Part shown: positions 6,246 to 29,219 of the stretch, in pieces
How positions within the stretch are numbered: position 1 is the first letter of the stretch
Layout: every line of letters starts with the position of its first letter
DNA from: Wallemia ichthyophaga EXF-994
Lineage: Eukaryota; Fungi; Basidiomycota
DNA length: 32,000 nt
NCBI RefSeq assembly: GCF_000400465.1
Contig: NW_008806288.1
Location: 60,001 to 92,000 of the forward strand
Reading direction: 5' to 3'
Notes under the pieces: model-generated
What the model was told of the DNA's origin: nothing
Databases searched by the model: none
The model's input: the letters and a program-made list of their open reading frames with translations, nothing else
Position numbers and translations under genes: made by a program

Positions 6246-7178
6246 ATGACTTCACCGTTGGTACCTTCTTACACGCCTAAAGATTACGGCAGCTTCTTCC
6301 TTTCCGGTGCCACGTGCTGCACACTTTCTCATGGTTTCTTCACCCCTTTTGACGTCATCAAGACTCGGATTCAAGTGGACAGTGCTTTTAGAGGAGCAAA
6401 TCTACTCAGTGGAGCGAAGCAGATAGCATCCAAAGAGGGCCCCTCAACATTGCTCACTGGCTTTGGACCAACCGCGGTTGGATACTTCTTCCAGGGTGGT
6501 CTCAAGTTCGGTTTCTATGAATACTTCAAGCGTCTTTCTGTCCTCAGCGTTGGCTCCCATCAGGAGGCTGTTAGAAATAGAACAATGATTTATTTGACGT
6601 CAGCAGCAAGCGCAGAGCTCGTTGCTGACGTTGCTTTGGCTCCCTTGGAGGCAACGAGAATAAGACTGGTTTCGGATAAGAACTTTGGAGCTAAAGGAAT
6701 GGTTGATGGATTCTTGAAACTCGCACGTGAAGGTGGATTCAAGGTTTTATACGCCGGTTTCGTACCGCTTATCTTCAAGCAAGTGCCATACGCTGTTGGG
6801 CAGTTCATGACAAATGAATTCGCTCACAACATGGTTAATAGAAGTTTGAGCTCAGAAACTAGAAAGCAAATCAGCAATAACAAGGGTGCTGAGTTGACCT
6901 TGACATTGGGTTGTGGATTGGCGGCTGGTGTAGCAGCTGCGGTATTGAGTCATCCCGGTGACACGCTGATGAGTAAAATAAGTGGTAGTTCAGATAAAAA
7001 TCGTTCAGCGACTTCGCAACTCATCCAAATTGCTAAAAAGACGGGCTTCACTGGTTTATGGCAGGGTCTTGGAGCTAGGACTTGGATGACGGCTGGATTG
7101 GTTAGCAGTCAGTTTTTCATGTACAAGGCTATCAAAGATGCTATAGGTGCGCCGCCTGGAGTTGAAATCGATGCGTGA
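6246..7178 (+). CDS. MIR1: Mitochondrial phosphate carrier (SLC25, Mir1/Pic2 family)
   Basis: Three carrier repeats with Px[DE]xx[KR] signatures (PFDVIK, PLEATR, PGDTLM), plus GFGPTAVGYFFQGGLKFGFYE and KQVPY. Single exon; first ATG at 6246. Confidence 0.92.
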   Translation: MTSPLVPSYTPKDYGSFFLSGATCCTLSHGFFTPFDVIKTRIQVDSAFRGANLLSGAKQIASKEGPSTLLTGFGPTAVGYFFQGGLKFGFYEYFKRLSVLSVGSHQEAVRNRTMIYLTSAASAELVADVALAPLEATRIRLVSDKNFGAKGMVDGFLKLAREGGFKVLYAGFVPLIFKQVPYAVGQFMTNEFAHNMVNRSLSSETRKQISNNKGAELTLTLGCGLAAGVAAAVLSHPGDTLMSKISGSSDKNRSATSQLIQIAKKTGFTGLWQGLGARTWMTAGLVSSQFFMYKAIKDAIGAPPGVEIDA

Positions 7179-21411: not shown

Positions 21412-24102
21412 ATGAAGAGCGTGAATTTTCACAAAGGGGCAGGAACCCAGGACACGGATACGGAGGACGACGATCAGCTGCAGCCACAGTCACACTCGCA
21501 CTCAGGCGTCACGCTGTACGATACACCCGTGTCGCCCGTACATGCCACTTTCCCATCCAGCCCTTACATGAGCCTGCACAGTGATCTGGATAAGCCTGGG
21601 TTTGATTCCAGTACTACAAATCTCACCCACGCCCACTCCCACGGCGAGAAATCCCCTTTCGAACTGAGTGACGTGCCACTCGGAGATAGCAATGATGGCA
21701 ATTTCCATCCACCCAGACCAGCTTACAAGAAGCACGCCAACAGATCTTTTGACGCTCTTCGCAACGGCGAATGGTCCAAGTACAACGCCTCCGAATCGAA
21801 GCACAACCGCTTTCAATTCGCTGAGGGCGATATACCTAAATCCAAGGTAGTACGATTATACTTCTTTTTGATCAACACCTCCATTATCACTCGCTGGGCA
21901 ATTTTCGTCATCCCCATCGCTGGGCTTCTTGCCATCCCACTCATCATATCAGTCACAGCTGCACCCGACGCTGAGATTTTGCGCGTGCGCCTGCTGTGGT
22001 GGTCTATTTGGCTCGAAACCATCTGGGTCGGCTGGTGGGCTAGCTGGGCTACCTCCAAGATTATCCCGTGGTTCGCTAGACACACTATAGCCGTGATTCT
22101 ACCTAATGGCAAACACATGATCGACTATTTCGTCAGATGCGAAAAGTATCTTGCTGCCGTTGGCTGGACTGTGGCTGTGTGGGCTGTCTTCAACTTCTTA
22201 GTGCTCGTCAAGTTCTCCAGAGACCACTCTGACCCTTCGTATAGCACGTTATCTGTCATTGCACAGGTGCATGCTGGCATTATCATCTGTGCAGCTATTC
22301 TCGCTGGCGAGAAAATTGTTATTCAGTTGATTGCTTACAACTTCCACCGTACCTCGTACGATGACCGCATCCGCGAACAGAAGTTCCAGGTCAAGGTGCT
22401 CGCTGCTCTCTATGCGCGGAGCAGGGATCTGGGGCGCAAAGACACTCTCGACGGCTTTGGCAAGAGAGGTAAGGAGAAAGGAGGTGTCAAGGCGGGCAGG
22501 GTGTTTAGGAAAGCTGCACGTGAAGCGAAAGAAGCTGCTGCAAATGCTACTAGTGTGAGTAAGCAAAATTCGTTTATTCACCTCTAACGCACACCAATAC
22601 AGGCACTCGGTAATGTCGCTTCGGAGATCGCTGGTAGCTCTGTCTTGCAGCCCAACTCACCCATATCCATGGTCACTAATGCACTTGCGTCGGGAAAGAA
22701 GACGCGTCATCTTGCTCGCAGAATCTTTTACTCCTTTTCCCCCCCTTATCGCACCAGTCTCGTCTTGAGCGACATTGCTCACTTCTTCCCCGACCCCATC
22801 ACCGCCGAAGAGGCATTTGTGGTGTTTGACAAGGAGTGCAATGGCGATGTGACTCTTGAAGAGATTGAAATGGCTTGTTTGGAAATTCACCGGGAGCGAC
22901 TAGCTCTGACGTCGAGCATGCGCGATCTAGACAGTGCAGTAGCAGCCCTCAACAAGATCCTTATGTCCGTGTACGTTGTTGCAGCGTGTCTAGTGATCGT
23001 TGCGATGCTCGATGTGAAATTCTCTACACTCGTCACGTCTGCTGGCTCACTCGTGCTTGGGATGTCGTGGCTAATCGGGACCACTGCCCAGGAGATACTA
23101 GCTTCTATCATCTTCCTTTTCGTCAAACACCCCTACGATGTCGGCGATCGCGTAAAGATTGACGGTAACGATATGACAGTTAAGGAAATGAACCTCCTTT
23201 ACTCCATCTTTAGAGGCATCGACGGAACCATAACTCAGGCACCACATGCCGTGCTCAACCTCAAATATATTCATAATTACAGAAGAAGCGGCTCAACTTC
23301 GGAAGAATTTATATTCAACGTTTTTTATGATACCTCCTTCGACCAGATCGAGGATCTCAGATCACGCATGCTCCACTTCCTCAAAACGGAGAGGCGGGAT
23401 TTCATACAGGAGTGTGATATCAATATACTCGATTTACCGTAAGTTTCAGATTGAGTTGGAGTTGGAATCGGAGTTATATTGAGCACTCTCTAACATCCCT
23501 CCAGCGACCAGGAGAAGATGACACTCAGCACGTCGATCAACTATAAGTCCAATTGGCAGAACATCGCACTCTACACGCAGCGGCGGGTGAAATGGATGGT
23601 TGCGATGAAGATAGCCCTGGCCGAGTCTAAGATATATGGACCAGCGGGCGATCCACTGGCGCCTGAACCAAGTCTGTATATGAAGGTGCCTTACGAGCCT
23701 CCAGCTAAAACGGGTGATGATGTTGAGGCGCCGCTACCGGACGACGAACGCACGACCGATCTACGCAGAGCTGCGTCTATGGCCTTGAACGGTGGCCGTA
23801 GAGCGCTCATACATAGAATGGATAAAGAGGAGGAGGCACTTTATCAGAGCGGACTCGAGACTGAGCCGCGAGAGAACATGGTTGATACTTTCACAATGCA
23901 GTTGCCTGGAGGGGCGCAGCATAGCCAGCATGCACAAGATGCACAACACGAAGGTCGACCAACAACACCACACTCAACAACGCAATCTTTCAACGCTACA
24001 CCATCTCAAGTCGAAGCGGGTAGAGTTAGAATACAATCTCCGGAACAGATACCAGGACCGCCGAGAGGGGACAGTGACTATGAAATGCGTAGGATTGACT
24101 GA
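21412..24102 (+). CDS. MscS-like mechanosensitive channel (fungal Msy1/Msy2 type), 2 introns
   Basis: Multiple TM segments, an EF-hand-like FDKECNGDVTLEE, IFLFVKHPYDVGDRV and VKEMNLL. Introns at 22555-22602 and 23439-23504 join three ORFs. Confidence 0.93.
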
Positions 24103-24313
24103 GTGAATTGTAGTTTTACTTTTTACTGCTTTGGACATTTTATAAAAAAAAAACATTTAAAATCAATATTGGGGTCCTCCCGCGCTTAAATGTCTTTGTT
24201 TTCAACAAAGAAGCAAACAAAGAGAGGCGGATGTGACAGTTACTGAAAGAACGGGGCTAATAGGTGACGGGGAAGATTGTTGTACTTGAGCGATTTGCAA
24301 TTTGAATTCGCAA

Positions 24314-24631
24314 ATGTCGCAAATGGTTCGTTGCGCCGATCGGGAGCATTTCCACCTGCTGACGATCACCAGTCATCACCGTCGTCTTACTACAGTTACT
24401 CGTCAACGTCTCTATCTAGCCGTGGTTCAGCAAATTCTCAGAAACAAGCTAAATACGCAACGCAATGCTGGTCATGGCGCTGCTCGAGCTGCCAACTCTG
24501 CAACCATGGCCATCACGCAGTATGCCACAAGTAAGTGAACTGCTGCCAAGCCACTCAGAATAACACATTGCAGCTTATCGTGTGTGTCTCCCCGCCCGGC
24601 CAATTTCTCAACCAAGTGGTATCCCAATTAA
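24314..24631 (+). CDS. ZF-A: 75-aa single RanBP2/NZF-like zinc-finger microprotein
   Basis: Exons 24314-24325 (MSQM), 24373-24530 and 24574-24631. Introns are 47 nt (GTTCGT..GCTGAC..CAG) and 43 nt (GTAAGT..CAG). Finger: WRCSSCQLCNHGHHAVCHN|LSCVSPRP. Confidence 0.85.
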
Positions 24632-24933
24632 CGCATCGGCAACGTCACGTCATAGAAGCATAAGCATCAAAGCATATAACGCAGAGTACAACGCATATAC
24701 CTCGCATTGCATAAATTCCAGTGATGTAACCATCCTTGTCAACAGTGTATATATGTCAACATTCCTCTTTGCCCACCCAAGTTTACCGACAACGTCCAGC
24801 ACGGCGATAAAGTTCACGGCGTCGCTGGCCGGTGCGAGAGAATGTGGATGTTTTTTAAGCCGTCAAATTGATTTTTTTGCCCAATTCACCTCTTCCTTCT
24901 TGACACCGTCCACAAAGCAGTCAACAGAGAAGA

Positions 24934-25192
24934 ATGAGCCACCAGCAGCACACAGCCAGAGCGGCGTATGCGCCATACACCAAGAGCAACGTAACAATCA
25001 ACCAGCCGCAATTCAATCCACAGCCACACCTCTTCTGGTTGTGCTCGTGCGGGTATTGGTCGACGCACGCCTACCGATTCTGCTGCAAGTGAGTTGTGTG
25101 CTGTGTTAGATCGACATACCTAACACCCCACCCACAGCGAAAAATGCGGCTTCTCTCGTGAAGCTATCCAGAAAGGCCACTCACGGTTCTAG
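24934..25192 (+). CDS. ZF-B: 69-aa single zinc-finger microprotein
   Basis: Exons 24934-25088 and 25138-25192; 49-nt intron GTGAGT..CCTAAC..CAG. Finger: WLCSCGYWSTHAYRFCCN|EKCGFSR. A probable 5' leader intron starts at 24832, so the N-terminus is uncertain. Confidence 0.8.
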
Positions 25193-25299
25193 TCTGCAGA
25201 TCGATATCGTTATCTGGTCTTAGTTTGTCTCGCCTTTACGCACACTGCAACAAAATCAAAACTACTCTAGTAGAAGTCTAATTGCAATAATTTATTTGT

Positions 25300-25584
25300 C
25301 TAATTTAATTTATATTCCTCCGTCCTCCTCTTGTCGACATTGTGCTGGTGCGCGACTCTTTGACATGGTGATCTGTGCGTTAGCCGACGTGTCAGAATGG
25401 CTGTGATGTGTGTGTTGTGTGTATTGAGGCGGTACGCTGCAATATTTACAAACCTAAATTTACCCCCAATGATATAATCTTTGATAAGCTTATGCAGATG
25501 CATCTCGAATATGCAGGTCCAAACGGCATTCTTGTCGTCCGCCGCATGCACGTCTTCTCGCTGATCAACTGAATAACGGTGCAT
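25300..25584 (-). CDS. Possible small hypothetical gene (94-aa ORF, or about 73 aa after an in-frame 63-nt intron)
   Basis: ATG-initiated ORF ending in an AT-rich convergent region, with a good branch/acceptor GCTAACGCACAG. It contains AVWTCI but no further finger residues. No family was recognised. Confidence 0.25.
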   Translation of the reverse strand: MHRYSVDQREDVHAADDKNAVWTCIFEMHLHKLIKDYIIGGKFRFVNIAAYRLNTHNTHITAILTRRLTHRSPCQRVAHQHNVDKRRTEEYKLN

Positions 25585-26212
25585 GAATTTAATACGCTTT
25601 GTAGATTACCTACTATAGTGCTATACTGCTATAGTACTATGCTACTCTACTCCTCTTGTGCTCTTAGAAGGTGTCTTAAATATCCCATGGAGTAAGAATC
25701 CGTCACAAGGCGACCACGCTTCTAGTAAACATTTTTTCCATGCTGATACATTTGCCGGCAAAATTTACGATGATGCTGGCCTCGCGATCGCCACCACTCC
25801 CTCTGAGCAGACGATACTGATCCACGACTACACGCGTCGCGTATGATACCCGGAATAATGGCAGGTACAGGTATCTAATAGGCAACCAATACCTCCAAAA
25901 TCCCCACAGATAGTTCAAAGGCTACCACTATACTTGGAATCCAGCGTGCTCAACAAATTTTCTCTGTGTGCCTAACCTCGTGGCCACGGGGAAAAACAAT
26001 CGCTACCAATCAGTGGTCTCAGCTCAGCTGGCCTCAGCTATTCCAAGATCACACTGAGTAGATTACAAGCCATCGAGAACACGTCTGATCAGGTGAATTG
26101 AAAGACTGTATCATCCATTTCACAAAGTCAATCATAGGTAAGTTGCCGCAGATAAAAGCTTTAAATTTCTCTCACAAGATTGACTCACGACGTGATAAAT
26201 ATAGTGGTGAAT

Positions 26213-26438
26213 ATGGCATTCAAAGTACGCTCAGTCTTACTCAGCCCCACTCACCCCGCTCGCCCCGCTCATCCCCCACTTGCAGACCGTCCCCAGCCAA
26301 TTCGACCAAACAATCATCGAAATACCAAAGCAAATAGATGCAAGCACCGTCTGGCCCTGCCCTGTCTGCCGTTATCGCAATCCTCAATCAGAGAACAGCT
26401 GCAACAATCCTTTCTGCAAGTACGTCAAGTCGGCATGA
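26213..26438 (+). CDS. ZF-C: 54-aa single zinc-finger microprotein
   Basis: Exons 26213-26224 (MAFK) and 26286-26438; 61-nt intron GTACGC..TGCAG. Finger: WPCPVCRYRNPQSENSCNNPFCKYVK. Confidence 0.85.
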
Positions 26439-26885
26439 ATAGACGCTATTTAAATTTGTATGCATCACTGCTATTATTATTTGCAATAATAGATATCATC
26501 AATCAGCGTTATTCCTGTTGCTTGCTACCTACTGCCTGGTTTCTCCTGCTTCAGACGCATCGACTTGAACGCCATATTATAGTCCAAAGCAGTGTTACCT
26601 CTCTTCCCGCCATAACAGAATACATGACGCACTCTTTGAACATACCTATTCGCCCGAATAACGAATAATAAATTGAAGATCGAAGACCGGAAGACCGAAG
26701 ATGGTCTCGGCGGACAAAACTAGGAATGATTAATAGATGGCGAGTTGGAAAAGGAAATTATAGATACTATTGCCCGCATCGTCTAAAGCGCGATGCGCCT
26801 TGGCACGTGCCTTTGGCATCTAATCACAGGAACTGGGAATTGAATAACATGATTCTCTCCGGATATCACTACGTAATTCGTATCC

Positions 26886-27047
26886 ATGACGCTTTATTAC
26901 AGATGGAAATGCGTGTCTTGTCGAGGCTGGTGGCCATATGACACTAGCTGGTGTGGAAAGTGAGTAGACAAGCAAAAGCTTTCTAGCAGGTCTAACATCA
27001 GACGCAGCTCTTCTTGTCGTATGTCAAAAGAAAGAAACTTGAGGTGA
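26886..27047 (+). CDS. ZF-D: 37-aa single zinc-finger microprotein
   Basis: Exons 26886-26959 and 27008-27047; 48-nt intron GTGAGT..TCTAAC..CAG. Product MTLYYRWKCVSCRGWWPYDTSWCGN|SSCRMSKERNLR. An extra upstream exon spliced to the AG at 26902 is possible. Confidence 0.8.
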
Positions 27048-27734
27048 TGCAGACGTCTTCACATATTCACTGTAATAATTCTCTACATACAATGTTTGCC
27101 TTTTTCTGCTTGTCTATTGTAATAGCACAGATTATGAAATCTGTTTCCATTAAGGCTCTTTCCCCTCCAGGGTCTCATCAGCTGGATTTCCTGATAGACC
27201 TGAGACAAATAACAGTGGAGGACGGCACCTCACACCAGTAAAGCACTCGCAGGAATCCAACTTTAAAAGGGCTATTGGATTTCGTTTCCAAACCATCAGA
27301 TATTTTGCATTCAAAGTAAATAAGTCTTCCGTCAGCTATACTTAAATTTAACTAATGTATTGGTCTTCAGATGGCTTACCCCCCTTGGTACCGTTCAAAC
27401 TGCAATCCCTGGAGCAAAATCTTATACTGCCAACTATTTGGAAAGCGCAGCCGTTTCAGAAATCCTCCTTAAACCTCTGCCGGTGGGTTGCCGAATCAAG
27501 CCGGCTCATCAGCAACGACCACCATGAGAATCGGTCAGTATGTCTCATCTTACAAATTATACAACAAAACAAAGCAGTCAAGACAATAAAGCATTTTTTG
27601 TAATCACCTTACACCCCCTTAGAACTTTGTTGCACATTTGCCCCTTTACCCCTTTGCACAGCACGGCATAAAAGACAAAGCCGAAGTTTATTCCTACTCA
27701 ATACGCTCCGCCATAATTATACAATCAGACAATA

Positions 27735-27879
27735 AGTGCGCGATGAAGCTGCGACCATAGTAAAGTGACTTCTCTGATGACGTTTAGTGTGGTTCTGTCC
27801 AATCTGCGCAATAACTAATGACAAGTTCATCAAAGTGTGTCGCCAATGCGGATTCACCACTAAGCCGCAATGGCAGTAG
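27735..27879 (+). CDS. ZF-E: zinc-finger microprotein, simplest model 30 aa with an intron-split ATG
   Basis: Exon 27788-27879 encodes the canonical RanBP2 finger WFCPICAITNDKFIKVCRQCGFTTKPQWQ*. An in-frame TGA at 27778 forces splicing; intron 27736-27787 (GTGCGC..CTGAT..TTAG, 52 nt) joins A|TG. Confidence 0.7.
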
Positions 27880-28184
27880 TCAGTTCATCTGATCTGTGAG
27901 TTTAAAGCTCAGAAAGTAACCCATGCTAAAGCAAGATCAGTCCAATATGCACTTTATATCAGCAACATCCTAAAAATTGTAATAATTTGTACTGTTCTCG
28001 AATCCATATATCCTGCAACTGCTATCTGTATATAAGGGGGTTGACCATCAGCTCCAATAAGTAGGGCGTGCAATCAATTTCATCCAGTGACACTGCCGAC
28101 AATTACGGAGTAGCTTTCGCTAGCGAGCAGCTACAGGGTTCACTGTTCGGTAATTGACTTCACCTCAGCTCCAGCTGAGTAGTA

Positions 28185-28507
28185 ATGACAAGTCAAAGGT
28201 AAGACAAAGCAGACACAAAATTGAAATTTATCAATTCTCCTAGCCCGCATGATTTAGACTTTGTTTCTCCTCTATCAGATACGATCGGATAGTAGCCGAG
28301 ATTAGGGTGATCGAGAAGACGATAACGTGGACACAAATAATTAAAGATTTGAAAATTACAGCTATCGCTGAAAATATAGCGACTTGTCATGCTTATCAGT
28401 GTTATGTCCCCTATTGCTGCAGTGACGAAATAAGGTTTCCATTGTCTTCAAAAGTCTTTGTTGAATGTGAAAGGTTAGCTCTCTCTTTTTCGGAAACAAT
28501 CAAATAA
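28185..28507 (+). CDS. Possible 80-aa degenerate relative of the ZF genes (low confidence)
   Basis: ATG 28185 with a GTAAGA donor at 28199. The acceptor at 28278 gives MTSQR|YDRIV..TITWTQII..TCHAYQCY..; the nearer acceptor at 28243 gives only a 20-aa peptide. Confidence 0.2.
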
Positions 28508-28783
28508 TGACGTTCTATGTTCGTTTTGCGTTCTTGTAGCTGGATGCAGCTAACACAGTCCAGTTTCACAAGAAGCCCGTCAACAAGGATAAGAGTACAC
28601 CTCCGAGCCAAGAGAAAGGCTGCATTAACGATTCAAACATAAATTGGACGTGTATTATATGTGAGTATGGCGTGACATGGACAGGAATCATCCTAACCAG
28701 TCTCAGGCGGCACTTCGAATGCGTTTGGGTCCAGATATTGTGCCAATCCGACTTGCTCGTATGACAAGAATTGGGCATCTTGA
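28507..28783 (+). CDS. ZF-F: 61-aa single zinc-finger microprotein
   Basis: Exons 28507-28518 (MTFY), 28564-28660 and 28707-28783. Introns are 45 nt (GTTCGT..GCTAAC..CAG) and 46 nt (GTGAGT..CCTAAC..CAG). Finger: WTCII|CGTSNAFGSRYCANPTCSYDK. Confidence 0.85.
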
Positions 28784-28929
28784 ACCTCAAAGAACATACC
28801 ATTGCTTCATCGTATATCAATAGAATAGAGTGTATTGTAAGTTATAAAGCTGTCTCCTCATTGTCGCTGTATGTGCAAGAAGGGCAATTGTTTAGATTCT
28901 GAGTAGGCGCATGAATGCTGCCCACGCTC

Positions 28930-29219
28930 TCAGTACTCTCTTTTCTTCAAGTATTCCTCGATTGCTGCATCCAAAGCTTCCTCTGAGTTGCTGCAATCAT
29001 CATCAGTCAGTCCTGCTATTTAATCTGCGCGCACACCCACAACTTGGACAGACAGCTGTTGAGCTCCTTGTGTGGCTTCCTGCATGCCCACATAACTGAT
29101 ATCGTTCGGCTCGCAGTGCAATCTGCGAAAGCCTTGAACAAATCACTGCAATGCTGTAATCCAAGCTGCTTGTGCTGCTTTACGACGTCTTCTTCCTCTC
29201 TTCTGCTCAATATCCTCAT
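28930..29219 (-). CDS. CMC1: COX assembly mitochondrial protein, twin CX9C (Cmc1 family)
   Basis: MRILSRREEE...HCSDLFKAFADCTASRTISVMWACRKPHKELNSCL shows two CX9C motifs. Intron 29043-28991; C-terminus NSEEALDAAIEEYLKKREY*. Confidence 0.9.

What the first reader, a model, noticed from the sequence alone, without database searches (positions are those of the whole stretch)
24530..27008. Shared exon architecture shows the ZF genes are real paralogues: same phase-2 intron in the conserved Asn codon
Seen in sequence: ZF-A (24531-24573), ZF-B (25089-25137) and ZF-D (26960-27007) each have an intron splitting the Asn codon (AA|C) two residues after Cys3. Independently, ZF-A, ZF-C and ZF-F start with a 12-nt coding exon (MSQM, MAFK, MTFY) followed by a phase-0 intron. 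ZF-F instead has an intron inside the Cys2 codon, and ZF-C and ZF-E have none in the finger. Inference: chance ORFs would not share a splice position, so this supports descent by tandem duplication followed by intron gain or loss.
Basis: partly seen in the sequence, partly recalled or inferred. Interest (0 to 1): 0.7.

Follow-up and report, generated by a model that had tools for sequence, protein, structure and literature searches.

The report
Tandem mini zinc-finger genes in Wallemia

Summary
Confirmed and extended. All are GT..AG, 43-49 nt, phase 2, splitting AA|C two residues after Cys3.

The window is Wallemia ichthyophaga. Positions 24.3-28.8 kb hold six intact same-strand mini-genes (A-F) and one decayed copy (K). 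Each encodes one divergent RanBP2/NZF-like Cys4 zinc ribbon, W-x-C-x2-C-x10-C-x-N-x2-C; ZF-E ends C-x2-C.

The syntenic array exists in five other Wallemia lineages, with up to 12 genes. The Asn-codon intron is present in 31 of 33 genes of this class. The only exceptions are W. ichthyophaga ZF-C and ZF-F, and their orthologues keep it. So the polarity is precise intron loss, not gain.

Synonymous sites between species are saturated (pS 0.70-1.0) while pN is 0.19-0.28, and introns align at chance level, so the proteins are under purifying selection. Public annotations independently use the same splice sites for ZF-B (three species) and the ZF-F orthologue (W. mellicola). The other five are unannotated in the four strains examined.

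No Pfam model reaches its cut-off. Profile and fold searches point to RanBP2-type fingers. Biochemical function is inferred only: stand-alone zinc-dependent binding modules.

The parts
24314..24631 (+). ZF-A, 75 aa. Exons 24314-24325, 24373-24530, 24574-24631. Introns 24326-24372 (phase 0) and 24531-24573 (phase 2, in the Asn codon).
   Evidence: Orthologues in W. hederae (L001 9373-9664) and W. mellicola (L010) keep both introns and the C-terminal N-L-[SA]-C-V-S-P-R-P. Across four strains, 5 of 7 exon SNPs are synonymous in this spliced frame, including AAC>AAT in the split codon at 24574.
24934..25192 (+). ZF-B, 69 aa. Exons 24934-25088 and 25138-25192. Intron 25089-25137 (phase 2, Asn codon). 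The first knuckle is C-x-C.
   Evidence: Identical to annotated protein J056_001384 / E3P92_02037 (P0214). Orthologues are annotated in W. hederae (P0001) and W. mellicola (P0213). dN/dS 0.08-0.15. No SNPs in four strains.
26213..26438 (+). ZF-C, 54 aa. Exons 26213-26224 and 26286-26438. Intron 26225-26285 (phase 0). No intron in the finger.
   Evidence: Orthologues L001 11334-11664 and L006 1564-1888 carry the Cys2 phase-1 and Asn phase-2 introns, so both were lost here.
26886..27047 (+). ZF-D, 37 aa. Exons 26886-26959 and 27008-27047. Intron 26960-27007 (phase 2, Asn codon). Trp replaces the canonical Asn after Cys2.
   Evidence: Orthologues in L001, L006, L007 and L010 have the same intron. 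No exon SNPs and one intron SNP in four strains.
27371..27472 (+). ZF-K, a decayed copy (MAYPPWYRSNCNPWSKILYCQLFGKRSRFRNPP). Cys1 has become Arg and the fourth ligand is lost. Probable pseudogene in W. ichthyophaga.
   Evidence: Orthologues are intact in L001 (15121-15222) and L006 (7004-7105) with C-x2-C-x8-C-x(1,2)-C. A 4-nt insertion is present in L004; 4-5 SNPs within about 100 nt are present in L004 and L005.
27735..27879 (+). ZF-E, 30 aa, canonical C-x2-C second knuckle. Proposed model: A (27735) | intron 27736-27787 | TG TGG.. 27788-27879. The start codon is rebuilt by splicing.
   Evidence: The contiguous frame has a stop 4 codons upstream of Trp and no ATG. L006 and L007 have ATG directly before TGG, after a 5'UTR intron. 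W. hederae reads AT|intron|G TGG. Protein 77-93% identical among four lineages. No SNPs in four strains. The split start codon is an inference.
28507..28783 (+). ZF-F, 61 aa. Exons 28507-28518, 28564-28660, 28707-28783. Introns 28519-28563 (phase 0) and 28661-28706 (phase 1, in the Cys2 codon). The Asn intron is absent.
   Evidence: Orthologues in L001, L006, L007 and L010 all have three introns including the Asn intron. The W. mellicola orthologue is annotated with exactly that model (P0169 = WALSEDRAFT_70009).
24103..28928 (.). The whole array interval. It lies between the stop of the Msy1-type mechanosensitive-channel gene (24102) and the Cmc1 gene on the minus strand (about 28930-29219).
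   Evidence: The same synteny, Msy1 - array - Cmc1(-) - VTT/TMEM41B - Cupin_8, holds in L001, L002-L005 and L010; L006, L007 and L009 show the downstream side of it (VTT, Cupin_8 and beyond; Cmc1 called in L009).

Best explanation
The interval 24.3-28.8 kb of this Wallemia ichthyophaga window is a tandem, same-strand array of mini-genes. There are six intact genes (ZF-A to ZF-F, 30-75 aa) and one decayed copy (ZF-K).

Each encodes a single Cys4 zinc ribbon of the RanBP2/NZF type. In most members the second knuckle is lengthened to C-x-N-x2-C, giving the core W-x-C-x2-C-x10-C-x-N-x2-C.

The genes descend from one ancestor by tandem duplication that predates the split of the Wallemia lineages sampled. 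That ancestor already had a phase-2 intron inside the invariant Asn codon. One subfamily (C, F, F2, H) also had a 12-nt first exon with a phase-0 intron, and a phase-1 intron inside the Cys2 codon.

W. ichthyophaga later shrank the array. It lost F2, G, H, I and J, and K is decaying. It also removed three introns precisely: both finger introns of ZF-C and the Asn intron of ZF-F. In each gene the 3'-most introns went, which fits cDNA-mediated intron loss.

Shown here:
- gene structures and orthology;
- conservation of intron positions;
- purifying selection.

Inferred only:
- the proteins bind one zinc ion through the four Cys;
- they act as free-standing binding modules (protein or RNA ligands), each paralogue with its own conserved surface;
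- ZF-E's start codon is rebuilt across a splice junction.
For: Coordinates and frames:
- Splice coordinates, signals and reading frames were verified.
- The composite finger-plus-intron pattern occurs 3 times versus 0 in 200 shuffles.

Organism and synteny:
- The neighbouring VTT protein is 100% identical to W. ichthyophaga E3P92_02039.
- Syntenic arrays: W. hederae 12 genes, L006 11, L007 5, L009 at least 3, W. mellicola 7.

Intron conservation:
- The Asn intron is in 31 of 33 C-x-N-x2-C genes. It is missing only from window ZF-C and ZF-F.
- W, the four Cys and the split Asn are invariant in all 25 aligned cores.

Selection:
- Pooled pN is 0.19-0.28 against pS 0.70-1.0.
- Introns align at 40-65% identity, which is chance level, while exons align at 51-83%.
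- Introns within the window are no more alike than shuffled controls (0.498 vs 0.491).
- Across four W. ichthyophaga strains, ZF-B, D, E and F exons carry no SNPs. Introns and spacers carry many. ZF-A has 5 synonymous changes out of 7.

Independent annotation:
- P0214 equals my ZF-B model exactly. P0169 equals my three-intron model of W. mellicola ZF-F exactly.

Protein class:
- In the profile search of 1.84 billion proteins, the hits inspected were the two Wallemia mini-proteins plus repeat proteins; the four repeat proteins scanned pass Pfam's RanBP cut-off.
- The AF2 model has pLDDT 84-88 over the finger. Its top Foldseek hits are Nup153, Nup358, MDM2, RYBP and TRABID fingers at 0.8-2.4 A rmsd.
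- Subfamily profiles match: hhalign 71-95% for C/F/F2/H against the other subfamilies (K 9%); other pairs 2-50%.
Against: - I had no transcript, junction-read or peptide evidence. The 2013 expression supplements do not list these proteins.
- The ZF-B annotations in the W. ichthyophaga and W. hederae strain assemblies come from ab initio and protein-evidence pipelines. They are therefore not independent of sequence signals.
- No Pfam family reaches its gathering score on any member.
- Foldseek E-values (0.26 or higher) are not significant for so small a domain.
- ZF-B has a C-x-C first knuckle, and ZF-B and ZF-D lack the canonical Asn after Cys2.
- Signs of erosion exist: K is decayed, five genes are absent, ZF-E lacks a contiguous ATG, and ZF-D has a nonsense allele in some W. 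mellicola strains.
- Biochemical function is untested.
Confidence: 0.87

Rival explanations
1. The fingers are exons of one larger multi-finger RanBP2-type gene, or of one long transcript, and not separate mini-genes.
For: All units are on one strand with short spacers of 260-1020 nt. The best non-Wallemia matches to the family profile are proteins with 4-12 such fingers in one chain. One strain annotation fuses A and B, and another fuses the array start into the Msy1 gene.
Against: Each unit ends in a stop codon that is conserved in position in every lineage, and most have their own conserved ATG. Spacers are 5-20 times the 61-nt mean intron length of this genome and are not conserved between species. 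ZF-B and ZF-F are annotated as stand-alone genes in three and one species respectively. The fused models differ between strains of near-identical sequence, so they are pipeline noise.
Confidence: 0.04
2. The shared intron position reflects parallel insertion into a favoured proto-splice site (AA|GT context), and not inheritance from the ancestral gene.
For: Intron sequences of paralogues share no similarity, so homology of the introns themselves cannot be shown. Intron number does vary among copies.
Against: The position and phase are identical in 31 of 33 genes spanning 10 orthologue groups (plus the three L009 genes) and six lineages, whose neutral sites are saturated. The two exceptions sit in one species whose orthologues have the intron, which is the pattern of loss. 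The Cys2 phase-1 intron and the 12-nt exon co-occur in the C/F/F2/H subfamily, as expected from descent. Parallel gain would require about ten or more independent insertions at one nucleotide.
Confidence: 0.04
3. The family is real, but in W. ichthyophaga the array is a decaying relic. The window copies would be non-functional or on the way to loss.
For: Five of twelve ancestral genes are absent with no relic. K has lost two ligands and carries a frameshift in one strain. ZF-E has no contiguous ATG. ZF-A and ZF-C carry all the exon SNPs. Only ZF-B is annotated.
Against: ZF-B, D, E and F exons have no SNPs in four strains, while adjacent introns and spacers have about 2% variable sites. All six ORFs, all splice signals and all zinc ligands are intact. 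ZF-A's polymorphisms are mostly synonymous in the spliced frame. ZF-E's ATG loss is compensated across the junction in two species independently.
Confidence: 0.07
4. The ORFs are chance Cys-rich reading frames in non-coding DNA.
For: They are very short. No Pfam family passes its threshold. Most are unannotated.
Against: Frames, ligands, stops and splice sites are conserved across lineages with saturated synonymous sites, and pN is far below pS. The pattern never occurs in shuffles. Two members have matching independent annotations.
Confidence: 0.01

Closest known systems
RanBP2-type / NZF zinc finger (Pfam PF00641 Zn_ribbon_RanBP; PROSITE pattern W-x-C-x(2,4)-C-x3-N-x6-C-x2-C, quoted from memory)
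   Same: The W-x-C-x2-C start, the Asn four residues after Cys2 in A, C, E and F, and the 10-residue Cys2-Cys3 spacing all match. The predicted two-hairpin zinc ribbon has best structural matches to Nup153, Nup358, MDM2, RYBP, TRABID, ZRANB2 and FUS fingers. The family profile retrieves PF00641 repeat proteins.
   Different: The second knuckle is C-x-N-x2-C, not C-x2-C, in all members except E and I. No member reaches the Pfam cut-off: whole-protein scores 13-14 bits for ZF-C and ZF-F and 16.5 for the ZF-F core, versus 27. The domain is the whole protein rather than a module of a large protein. The Thr-Phe ubiquitin-contact pair of NZF fingers is absent after Cys2 (motif from my own knowledge).
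Multi-finger RanBP2-type repeat proteins with a C-N-x3-C second knuckle (P0122, P0124, P0125, P0127 and others; unnamed, from short Logan/JGI contigs)
   Same: The second knuckle has four residues and includes an Asn. The W-x-C-x2-C-x3-N-x6-C spacing matches. They are the top non-Wallemia hits to the family profile, E 8e-16 to 1e-10 summed over repeats.
   Different: They have 4-12 fingers in one 200-700 aa chain. Their Asn sits at Cys3+1, not Cys3+2. They carry the N-[FY]-x-x-R signature, which is shifted or absent in the Wallemia proteins. They pass Pfam PF00641. Organisms are unknown.
Pfam PF14952 zf-tcix (putative treble-clef zinc finger)
   Same: It is the most frequent weak Pfam hit: 14 of 25 cores, best E 5.8e-5, covering Cys1 to beyond Cys4.
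   Different: All scores (22 bits or less) are below the 31.2-bit cut-off. No literature was found on this family. I do not claim membership.
microProteins such as the plant MINI ZINC FINGER (MIF) proteins (comparison from my own knowledge, not tested)
   Same: Both are tiny proteins made of nothing but one zinc-finger interaction domain that is otherwise found inside larger proteins.
   Different: MIF proteins derive from ZF-HD transcription factors and are known to act by sequestering them. For the Wallemia proteins, no parent multi-domain gene, partner or activity is known.

Membership tests
RanBP2-type / NZF zinc finger (PF00641; PROSITE pattern) | Trp two residues before Cys1, and a first knuckle C-x(2,4)-C | tested here: met
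   W-x-C-x2-C is present in A, C, D, E and F and in all 25 aligned cores. ZF-B is the exception with C-x-C.
RanBP2-type / NZF zinc finger (PF00641; PROSITE pattern) | Asn at Cys2+4, and six residues to Cys3 | tested here: inconclusive
   The Cys2-Cys3 spacing is 10 residues in every member except K. Asn is present in A, C, E, F, F2, H and I. It is replaced by Trp in D, G and J and by Ser in B.
RanBP2-type / NZF zinc finger (PF00641; PROSITE pattern) | Second knuckle C-x2-C | tested here: not met
   A, B, C, D and F, and 33 genes in six lineages, have C-x-N-x2-C. Only E and I have C-x2-C.
RanBP2-type / NZF zinc finger (PF00641; PROSITE pattern) | Score at or above the Pfam gathering threshold (27 bits) | tested here: not met
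   Whole-protein scores are 13.4 bits (ZF-C) and 13.3 bits (ZF-F); the ZF-F core alone scores 16.5. 10 of 25 cores match at E up to 1, best 1.8e-4.
RanBP2-type / NZF zinc finger (PF00641; PROSITE pattern) | Two-hairpin zinc-ribbon fold | tested here: inconclusive
   The AF2 model of ZF-C exon 2 has pLDDT 84-88 over the finger. 8 of the top 10 Foldseek PDB hits are Nup153/Nup358 Ran-binding fingers, the other two being MDM2/HDM2 C4 fingers, at rmsd 1.5-2.4 A (2c6a excepted, 12.4 A). E-values of 0.26-1.1 are not significant.
RanBP2-type / NZF zinc finger (PF00641; PROSITE pattern) | Binds one Zn2+ through four Cys | not testable with these tools
   The four Cys are invariant in all intact members. 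Metal binding needs a bench assay.
NZF ubiquitin-binding subclass | Thr-Phe directly after Cys2 plus a hydrophobic residue after Cys4 (motif from my own knowledge) | tested here: not met
   The residues after Cys2 are GT, RY, QL/KL, RG/GD, AI/NI/SI, HC/HF/HI/HV, KS, GN and KT/KR. None is TF.
Paralogous family formed by tandem duplication | Adjacent, same strand, shared intron position and phase, and sequence similarity above chance | tested here: met
   All copies are on the + strand within 4.5 kb. The Asn phase-2 intron is in 31 of 33 genes. hhalign probabilities of the C/F/F2/H profile against the D/G/J, E/I, A and B profiles are 71-95%.
Paralogous family formed by tandem duplication | Orthologues of individual copies in syntenic order in related species | tested here: met
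   The order A B C F2 D G H I J K E F in W. hederae is repeated, with losses, in the window, L006, L007 and L010.
Pfam PF14952 zf-tcix | Score at or above the gathering threshold (31.2 bits) | tested here: not met
   The highest score listed is 22.3 bits (ZF-F core, E 9.4e-5); 14 of 25 cores match weakly, best E 5.8e-5.
microProtein (stand-alone interaction domain acting as a decoy) | Interferes with a larger protein that carries the same domain | not testable with these tools
   Only the size and the single-domain make-up are shown. No partner is known.

The most novel reading that the evidence does not exclude
The array is a genus-specific, birth-and-death family of stand-alone zinc-ribbon microProteins. 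Each paralogue would have its own conserved binding surface and act as a decoy or adaptor for RanBP2/NZF-type interactions (ubiquitin, Ran or RNA). The genes would be co-regulated through HMG-box-type ACAAAG elements, like those of basidiomycete pheromone-response factors. That would tie them to the unobserved sexual cycle of Wallemia. Two members (E, I) would have start codons that exist only after splicing.
Probability: 0.12. Interest if true: 0.7.

Novelty: new variant of a known kind. Interest (0 to 1): 0.5.

Why it matters
- **Annotation gap.** Five of six intact genes in a 4.8-kb stretch are missing from the W. ichthyophaga annotations examined. The genes are tiny (30-75 aa) and very intron-dense, with up to three introns in about 180 nt of coding sequence and internal exons of 12 and 40 nt. 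This is a concrete case of how micro-protein genes escape fungal gene finders, and the shared architecture gives a template for finding more.
- **Intron loss.** The locus is a clean natural example of precise, 3'-biased intron loss and gene loss in a genome known for its compaction. Polarity is fixed by several outgroups.
- **Protein class.** The proteins are a previously undescribed form of the RanBP2/NZF zinc ribbon: C-x-N-x2-C second knuckle, domain equals protein. If they prove to be decoys or adaptors, they would be a fungal counterpart of plant microProteins.

Tried and rejected
- **Exact look-up of spliced products.** I reached other genomes through ZF-B's orthologue P0001 and the VTT neighbour instead.
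- **Word-index homology searches.** The six window proteins found only P0001. Twenty-five family members found nothing at E up to 10. The family is almost absent from protein databases.
- **Profile job with sequences from other loci.** I re-ran it with contiguous window pieces plus P0001.
- **PDB sequence profile search.** It gave only rubredoxin-knuckle and weak MDM2/MDM4 matches, which are uninformative beyond 'Cys4 knuckles'.
- **Relics of lost genes.** tblastn for F2, G, H, I and J in the window found none.
- **Introner-like spread.** Window introns are no more similar to each other than shuffled controls, so I rejected this.
- **Expression evidence.** The supplements of the 2013 W. ichthyophaga transcriptome paper use GME gene ids. 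The ZF peptide strings are not in them.
- **Literature.** No paper was found linking Wallemia with RanBP2-type fingers and none on zf-tcix.
- **My first ZF-E model.** A 28-nt intron from ATGAAGCTGCGACCATA|GTAAAG was rejected as too short and out of frame.
- **Automatic acceptor for L001 gene G.** The 38-nt choice was replaced by the 43-nt one, which matches the orthologue.
Full report
**Observation.** I read 23.5-32.0 kb of the window and located each splice site by string search.

- Each starts GTAAGT or GTGAGT and ends CAG. B and D have a CTAAC branch site.
- Each sits between AA and C, so splicing rebuilds an Asn codon two residues after Cys3 and puts x-x-Cys4 in frame.
- The 12-nt first exons are also present: MSQM 24314-24325, MAFK 26213-26224 and MTFY 28507-28518, each followed by a phase-0 intron.
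- So is the phase-1 intron inside ZF-F's Cys2 codon (28661-28706).
- ZF-C (26352-26417) and ZF-E (27790-27849) have uninterrupted fingers.
- The combined DNA pattern (finger, AA|GT, 33-66 nt, AG|Y, x-x-Cys) occurs three times in the window, all on the + strand. It occurred 0 times in 200 dinucleotide shuffles.

**Organism and context.** The window is eukaryotic.

- An alignment of the six peptides found one database protein, the W. hederae hypothetical protein E3P99_00710. This is the ZF-B orthologue, and its sequence spans the same CCN|EKC junction.
- The downstream VTT/TMEM41B-like gene is 100% identical to W. ichthyophaga E3P92_02039. The window is therefore W. ichthyophaga.
- The array lies between a Msy1-type mechanosensitive-channel gene (stop at 24102) and Cmc1 on the minus strand. 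VTT, Cupin_8 and others follow.

**Comparative loci.** I fetched the syntenic region from the following sources:

| Locus | Source |
|---|---|
| L001 | W. hederae |
| L002-L005 | four W. ichthyophaga strains |
| L006, L007 | two Logan assemblies |
| L009 | an ENA metagenome contig |
| L010-L012 | W. mellicola |

- VTT protein identities place the window, L001 and L006 in one clade (86-91%).
- L007 groups with W. mellicola (98%).
- L009 is the most distant (74-79%).
- Every locus has same-strand fingers in the same interval: 12 in W. hederae, 11 in L006, 5 in L007, at least 3 before the contig end in L009, and 7 in W. mellicola.
- A rule-based model builder plus manual curation gave 38 gene models, plus 4 spliced and checked for W. 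mellicola.
- The ancestral order is A B C F2 D G H I J K E F.

**Intron history.** The class with a C-x-N-x2-C second knuckle has 33 genes, and 31 carry the phase-2 intron in the Asn codon.

- The two without it are the window's ZF-C and ZF-F.
- ZF-C orthologues in L001 and L006 have three introns: the 12-nt exon intron, the Cys2 phase-1 intron and the Asn phase-2 intron.
- ZF-F orthologues in L001, L006, L007 and L010 have the same three.
- So W. ichthyophaga deleted both finger introns of ZF-C and the Asn intron of ZF-F. The deletions were precise, because the coding sequence is colinear with the spliced orthologues.
- In both genes the 3'-most introns went and the 5' intron stayed. This is the classic signature of recombination with a cDNA (inference from established models of intron loss).
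- W. hederae F2 independently lost the Cys2 intron.
- The 12-nt exon is shared by C, F, F2 and H in all lineages.
- For ZF-A the conserved feature is ATG|GT. W. hederae and W. mellicola have a 3-nt first exon, and W. ichthyophaga has an extra upstream in-frame ATG.
- W. ichthyophaga lacks F2, G, H, I and J, with no relic detectable by tblastn.
- Its K copy (27371-27472) has lost two ligands.

**Are these real coding genes?**

- Between species, pooled synonymous differences are saturated (pS 0.70-1.0) while pN is 0.19-0.28. Where dS can be estimated, dN/dS is 0.08-0.43 per gene and about 0.1 pooled.
- Orthologous introns align at 40-65% identity, the level of unrelated sequence. Exons align at 51-83%.
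- In an alignment of 25 cores, W, the four Cys and the split Asn are invariant.
- Among four W. ichthyophaga strains, the exons of B, D, E and F carry no SNP, while their introns and the spacers do.
- ZF-A has seven exon SNPs, five of them synonymous in the spliced frame. One is AAC>AAT at 24574, the base that completes the split Asn codon.
- K carries a 4-nt frameshift in one strain.
- Public annotation agrees. P0214 (J056_001384 / E3P92_02037) is identical to my ZF-B. P0213 is identical to my W. mellicola ZF-B.
- P0169 (WALSEDRAFT_70009, present in 25 W. mellicola contigs) is identical to my three-intron model of the ZF-F orthologue.
- In the four W. ichthyophaga strain assemblies examined, only ZF-B is annotated. 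Two strains carry fused, mutually inconsistent models. This is expected from the MAKER pipeline described in PMC6738226.
- I found no transcript evidence.

**What the proteins are.**

- No Pfam family reaches its cut-off. The commonest weak hits are zf-tcix (14 of 25), Zn_ribbon_RanBP (10 of 25), zf-Sec23_Sec24 and Vps36-NZF-N.
- I ran a profile of window pieces plus P0001 against 1.84 billion representatives. It found the two Wallemia clusters and 89 other proteins, most of them with 4-12 repeats.
- The four repeat proteins I scanned pass Pfam's RanBP threshold, and their second knuckle is C-N-x3-C.
- An AlphaFold model of ZF-C exon 2 has pLDDT 84-88 over the finger. Its best PDB matches are almost all RanBP2-type fingers: Nup153, Nup358, MDM2, RYBP, TRABID, HOIL-1L, ZRANB2 and FUS. 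The rmsd is 0.8-2.4 A, but E-values are not significant for so small a domain.
- Profiles of the subfamilies match each other. C/F/F2/H against D/G/J gives 95%, against E/I 93%, against A 80% and against B 71%.
- I conclude these are divergent, stand-alone RanBP2/NZF-like zinc ribbons with a lengthened second knuckle. I do not file them as PF00641 members, because the C-x2-C knuckle and the Pfam threshold were tested and not met.

**How it most likely works.**

- Shown: gene structure, common descent, intron inheritance and loss, and selection on the proteins.
- Inferred: each protein folds around one zinc ion and acts as a free binding module.
- Each orthologue group keeps its own residues outside the ligands. 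Examples are ITNDKFIKVCRQCG[FY]STKP[QE]W in E, NV[FY]ESRYCANPTCS[YF]D in F and RMSKERN in D. This argues for distinct partners.
- The Thr-Phe pair used by NZF fingers to bind ubiquitin is absent.
- The N-[FY]-x-x-R RNA-contact pattern of ZRANB2/FUS-type fingers is shifted by one residue in F, F2 and H. Both motifs are quoted from my own knowledge.
- I cannot say which ligand is bound.

**Rivals.**

- One multi-finger gene: contradicted by conserved stops, each unit's own ATG and long unconserved spacers.
- Parallel intron gain: would need many hits at one nucleotide, and the exceptions follow a loss pattern.
- A decaying relic in this species: contradicted by SNP-free exons.
- Chance ORFs: refuted by the comparative data.

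**Side observations.**

- Genes I (four lineages) and E (window and W. hederae) have no contiguous ATG. In each, an intron joins A|TG or AT|G directly before the Trp codon, so the start codon exists only after splicing.
- In L006, L007 and L010 the same ZF-E intron ends 3 nt before a contiguous ATG.
- In the window the ATG>GTG change itself created the new AG acceptor.
- The hexamer ACAAAG/CTTTGT is enriched in the array of W. ichthyophaga (12 observed vs 3.4 expected) and W. hederae (20 vs 4.9). It is not enriched in L006.

**Verdict.** The object is a new variant of a known kind. It is of moderate interest for fungal genome annotation, intron evolution and micro-protein biology.

Noticed in passing
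window 27735-27790; L001 14142-14196 and 15473-15545; L006 5763-5818; L007 2240-2290; L010 about 6550-6603: In the C-x2-C genes the start codon seems to be split by an intron. Gene I reads A|GTRRGT..AG|TG TGG in four lineages. ZF-E reads A|..|TG TGG in the window and AT|..|G TGG in W. hederae. L006, L007 and W. mellicola have the same ZF-E intron 3 nt upstream of a contiguous ATG. In the window the ATG>GTG change itself made the new AG acceptor.
   Followed up: partly
window 24103-28928 (for example 24194-24222, 27569-27680, 28456); L001 9210-9263 and 15348-15421: ACAAAG/CTTTGT (the core of HMG-box / pheromone-response-type sites) is enriched in the array: 12 vs 3.4 expected in the window and 20 vs 4.9 in W. 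hederae, 0 of 300 shuffles each. It is not enriched in L006 and only weakly in W. mellicola. Clusters lie 100-160 nt upstream of ZF-A in the window and W. hederae, with a similar cluster in W. mellicola (L010 2915-3039). One CTTTGT lies 45-66 nt upstream of ZF-F's ATG in four lineages. W. hederae repeats AGACAAAGGCAAGGG upstream of A and E.
   Followed up: partly
It is intact in W. hederae and L006. In W. ichthyophaga it has lost Cys1 and the fourth ligand, carries a 4-nt insertion in strain L004, and has a high SNP density in L004 and L005. It is a probable pseudogene.
   Followed up: yes
L010 and L011 about 6300 (ZF-D), compared with L012: W. mellicola ZF-D carries a premature TGA in place of the Trp codon before Cys3 in two strains. 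The codon is intact (TGG) in a third. This is a segregating nonsense allele.
   Followed up: partly
L003 5037-5884; L005 2269-5868; L002/L004 5648-5906 and 5654-5912: Strain annotations of near-identical W. ichthyophaga sequence disagree. ZF-B stands alone (69 aa) in two strains. It is fused with ZF-A into a 251-aa model in one strain, and the array start is fused into the Msy1 gene (995 aa) in another.
   Followed up: no
window 26237-26262 (ZF-C intron 1): The intron length is polymorphic among strains (deletions of 9 and 18 nt; 61, 52 or 43 nt) within a C-rich repeated stretch (CCCCGCTCG/CCCCGCTCA-like).
   Followed up: no
L007 2652-4642; L010 6964-8946: In the W. mellicola clade, two NmrA-family genes sit inside the array between genes I and E. 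No ZF-C orthologue was found there.
   Followed up: no
L006 (Logan SRR25399871): This is an unnamed Wallemia lineage about equally close to W. ichthyophaga (VTT 90% aa) and W. hederae (91%). Those two are 86% identical to each other and are described as sister species in PMC6738226.
   Followed up: no
window 25282-25300, 26483-26495, 27975-27990; L001 10378-10395: Similar AT-rich strings (ATTGCAATAAT / ATTGTAATAAT / ATTGCAATTAT) lie 50-100 nt downstream of the stop codons of several ZF genes. They may be a shared 3'-end signal. This was seen by eye only.
   Followed up: no
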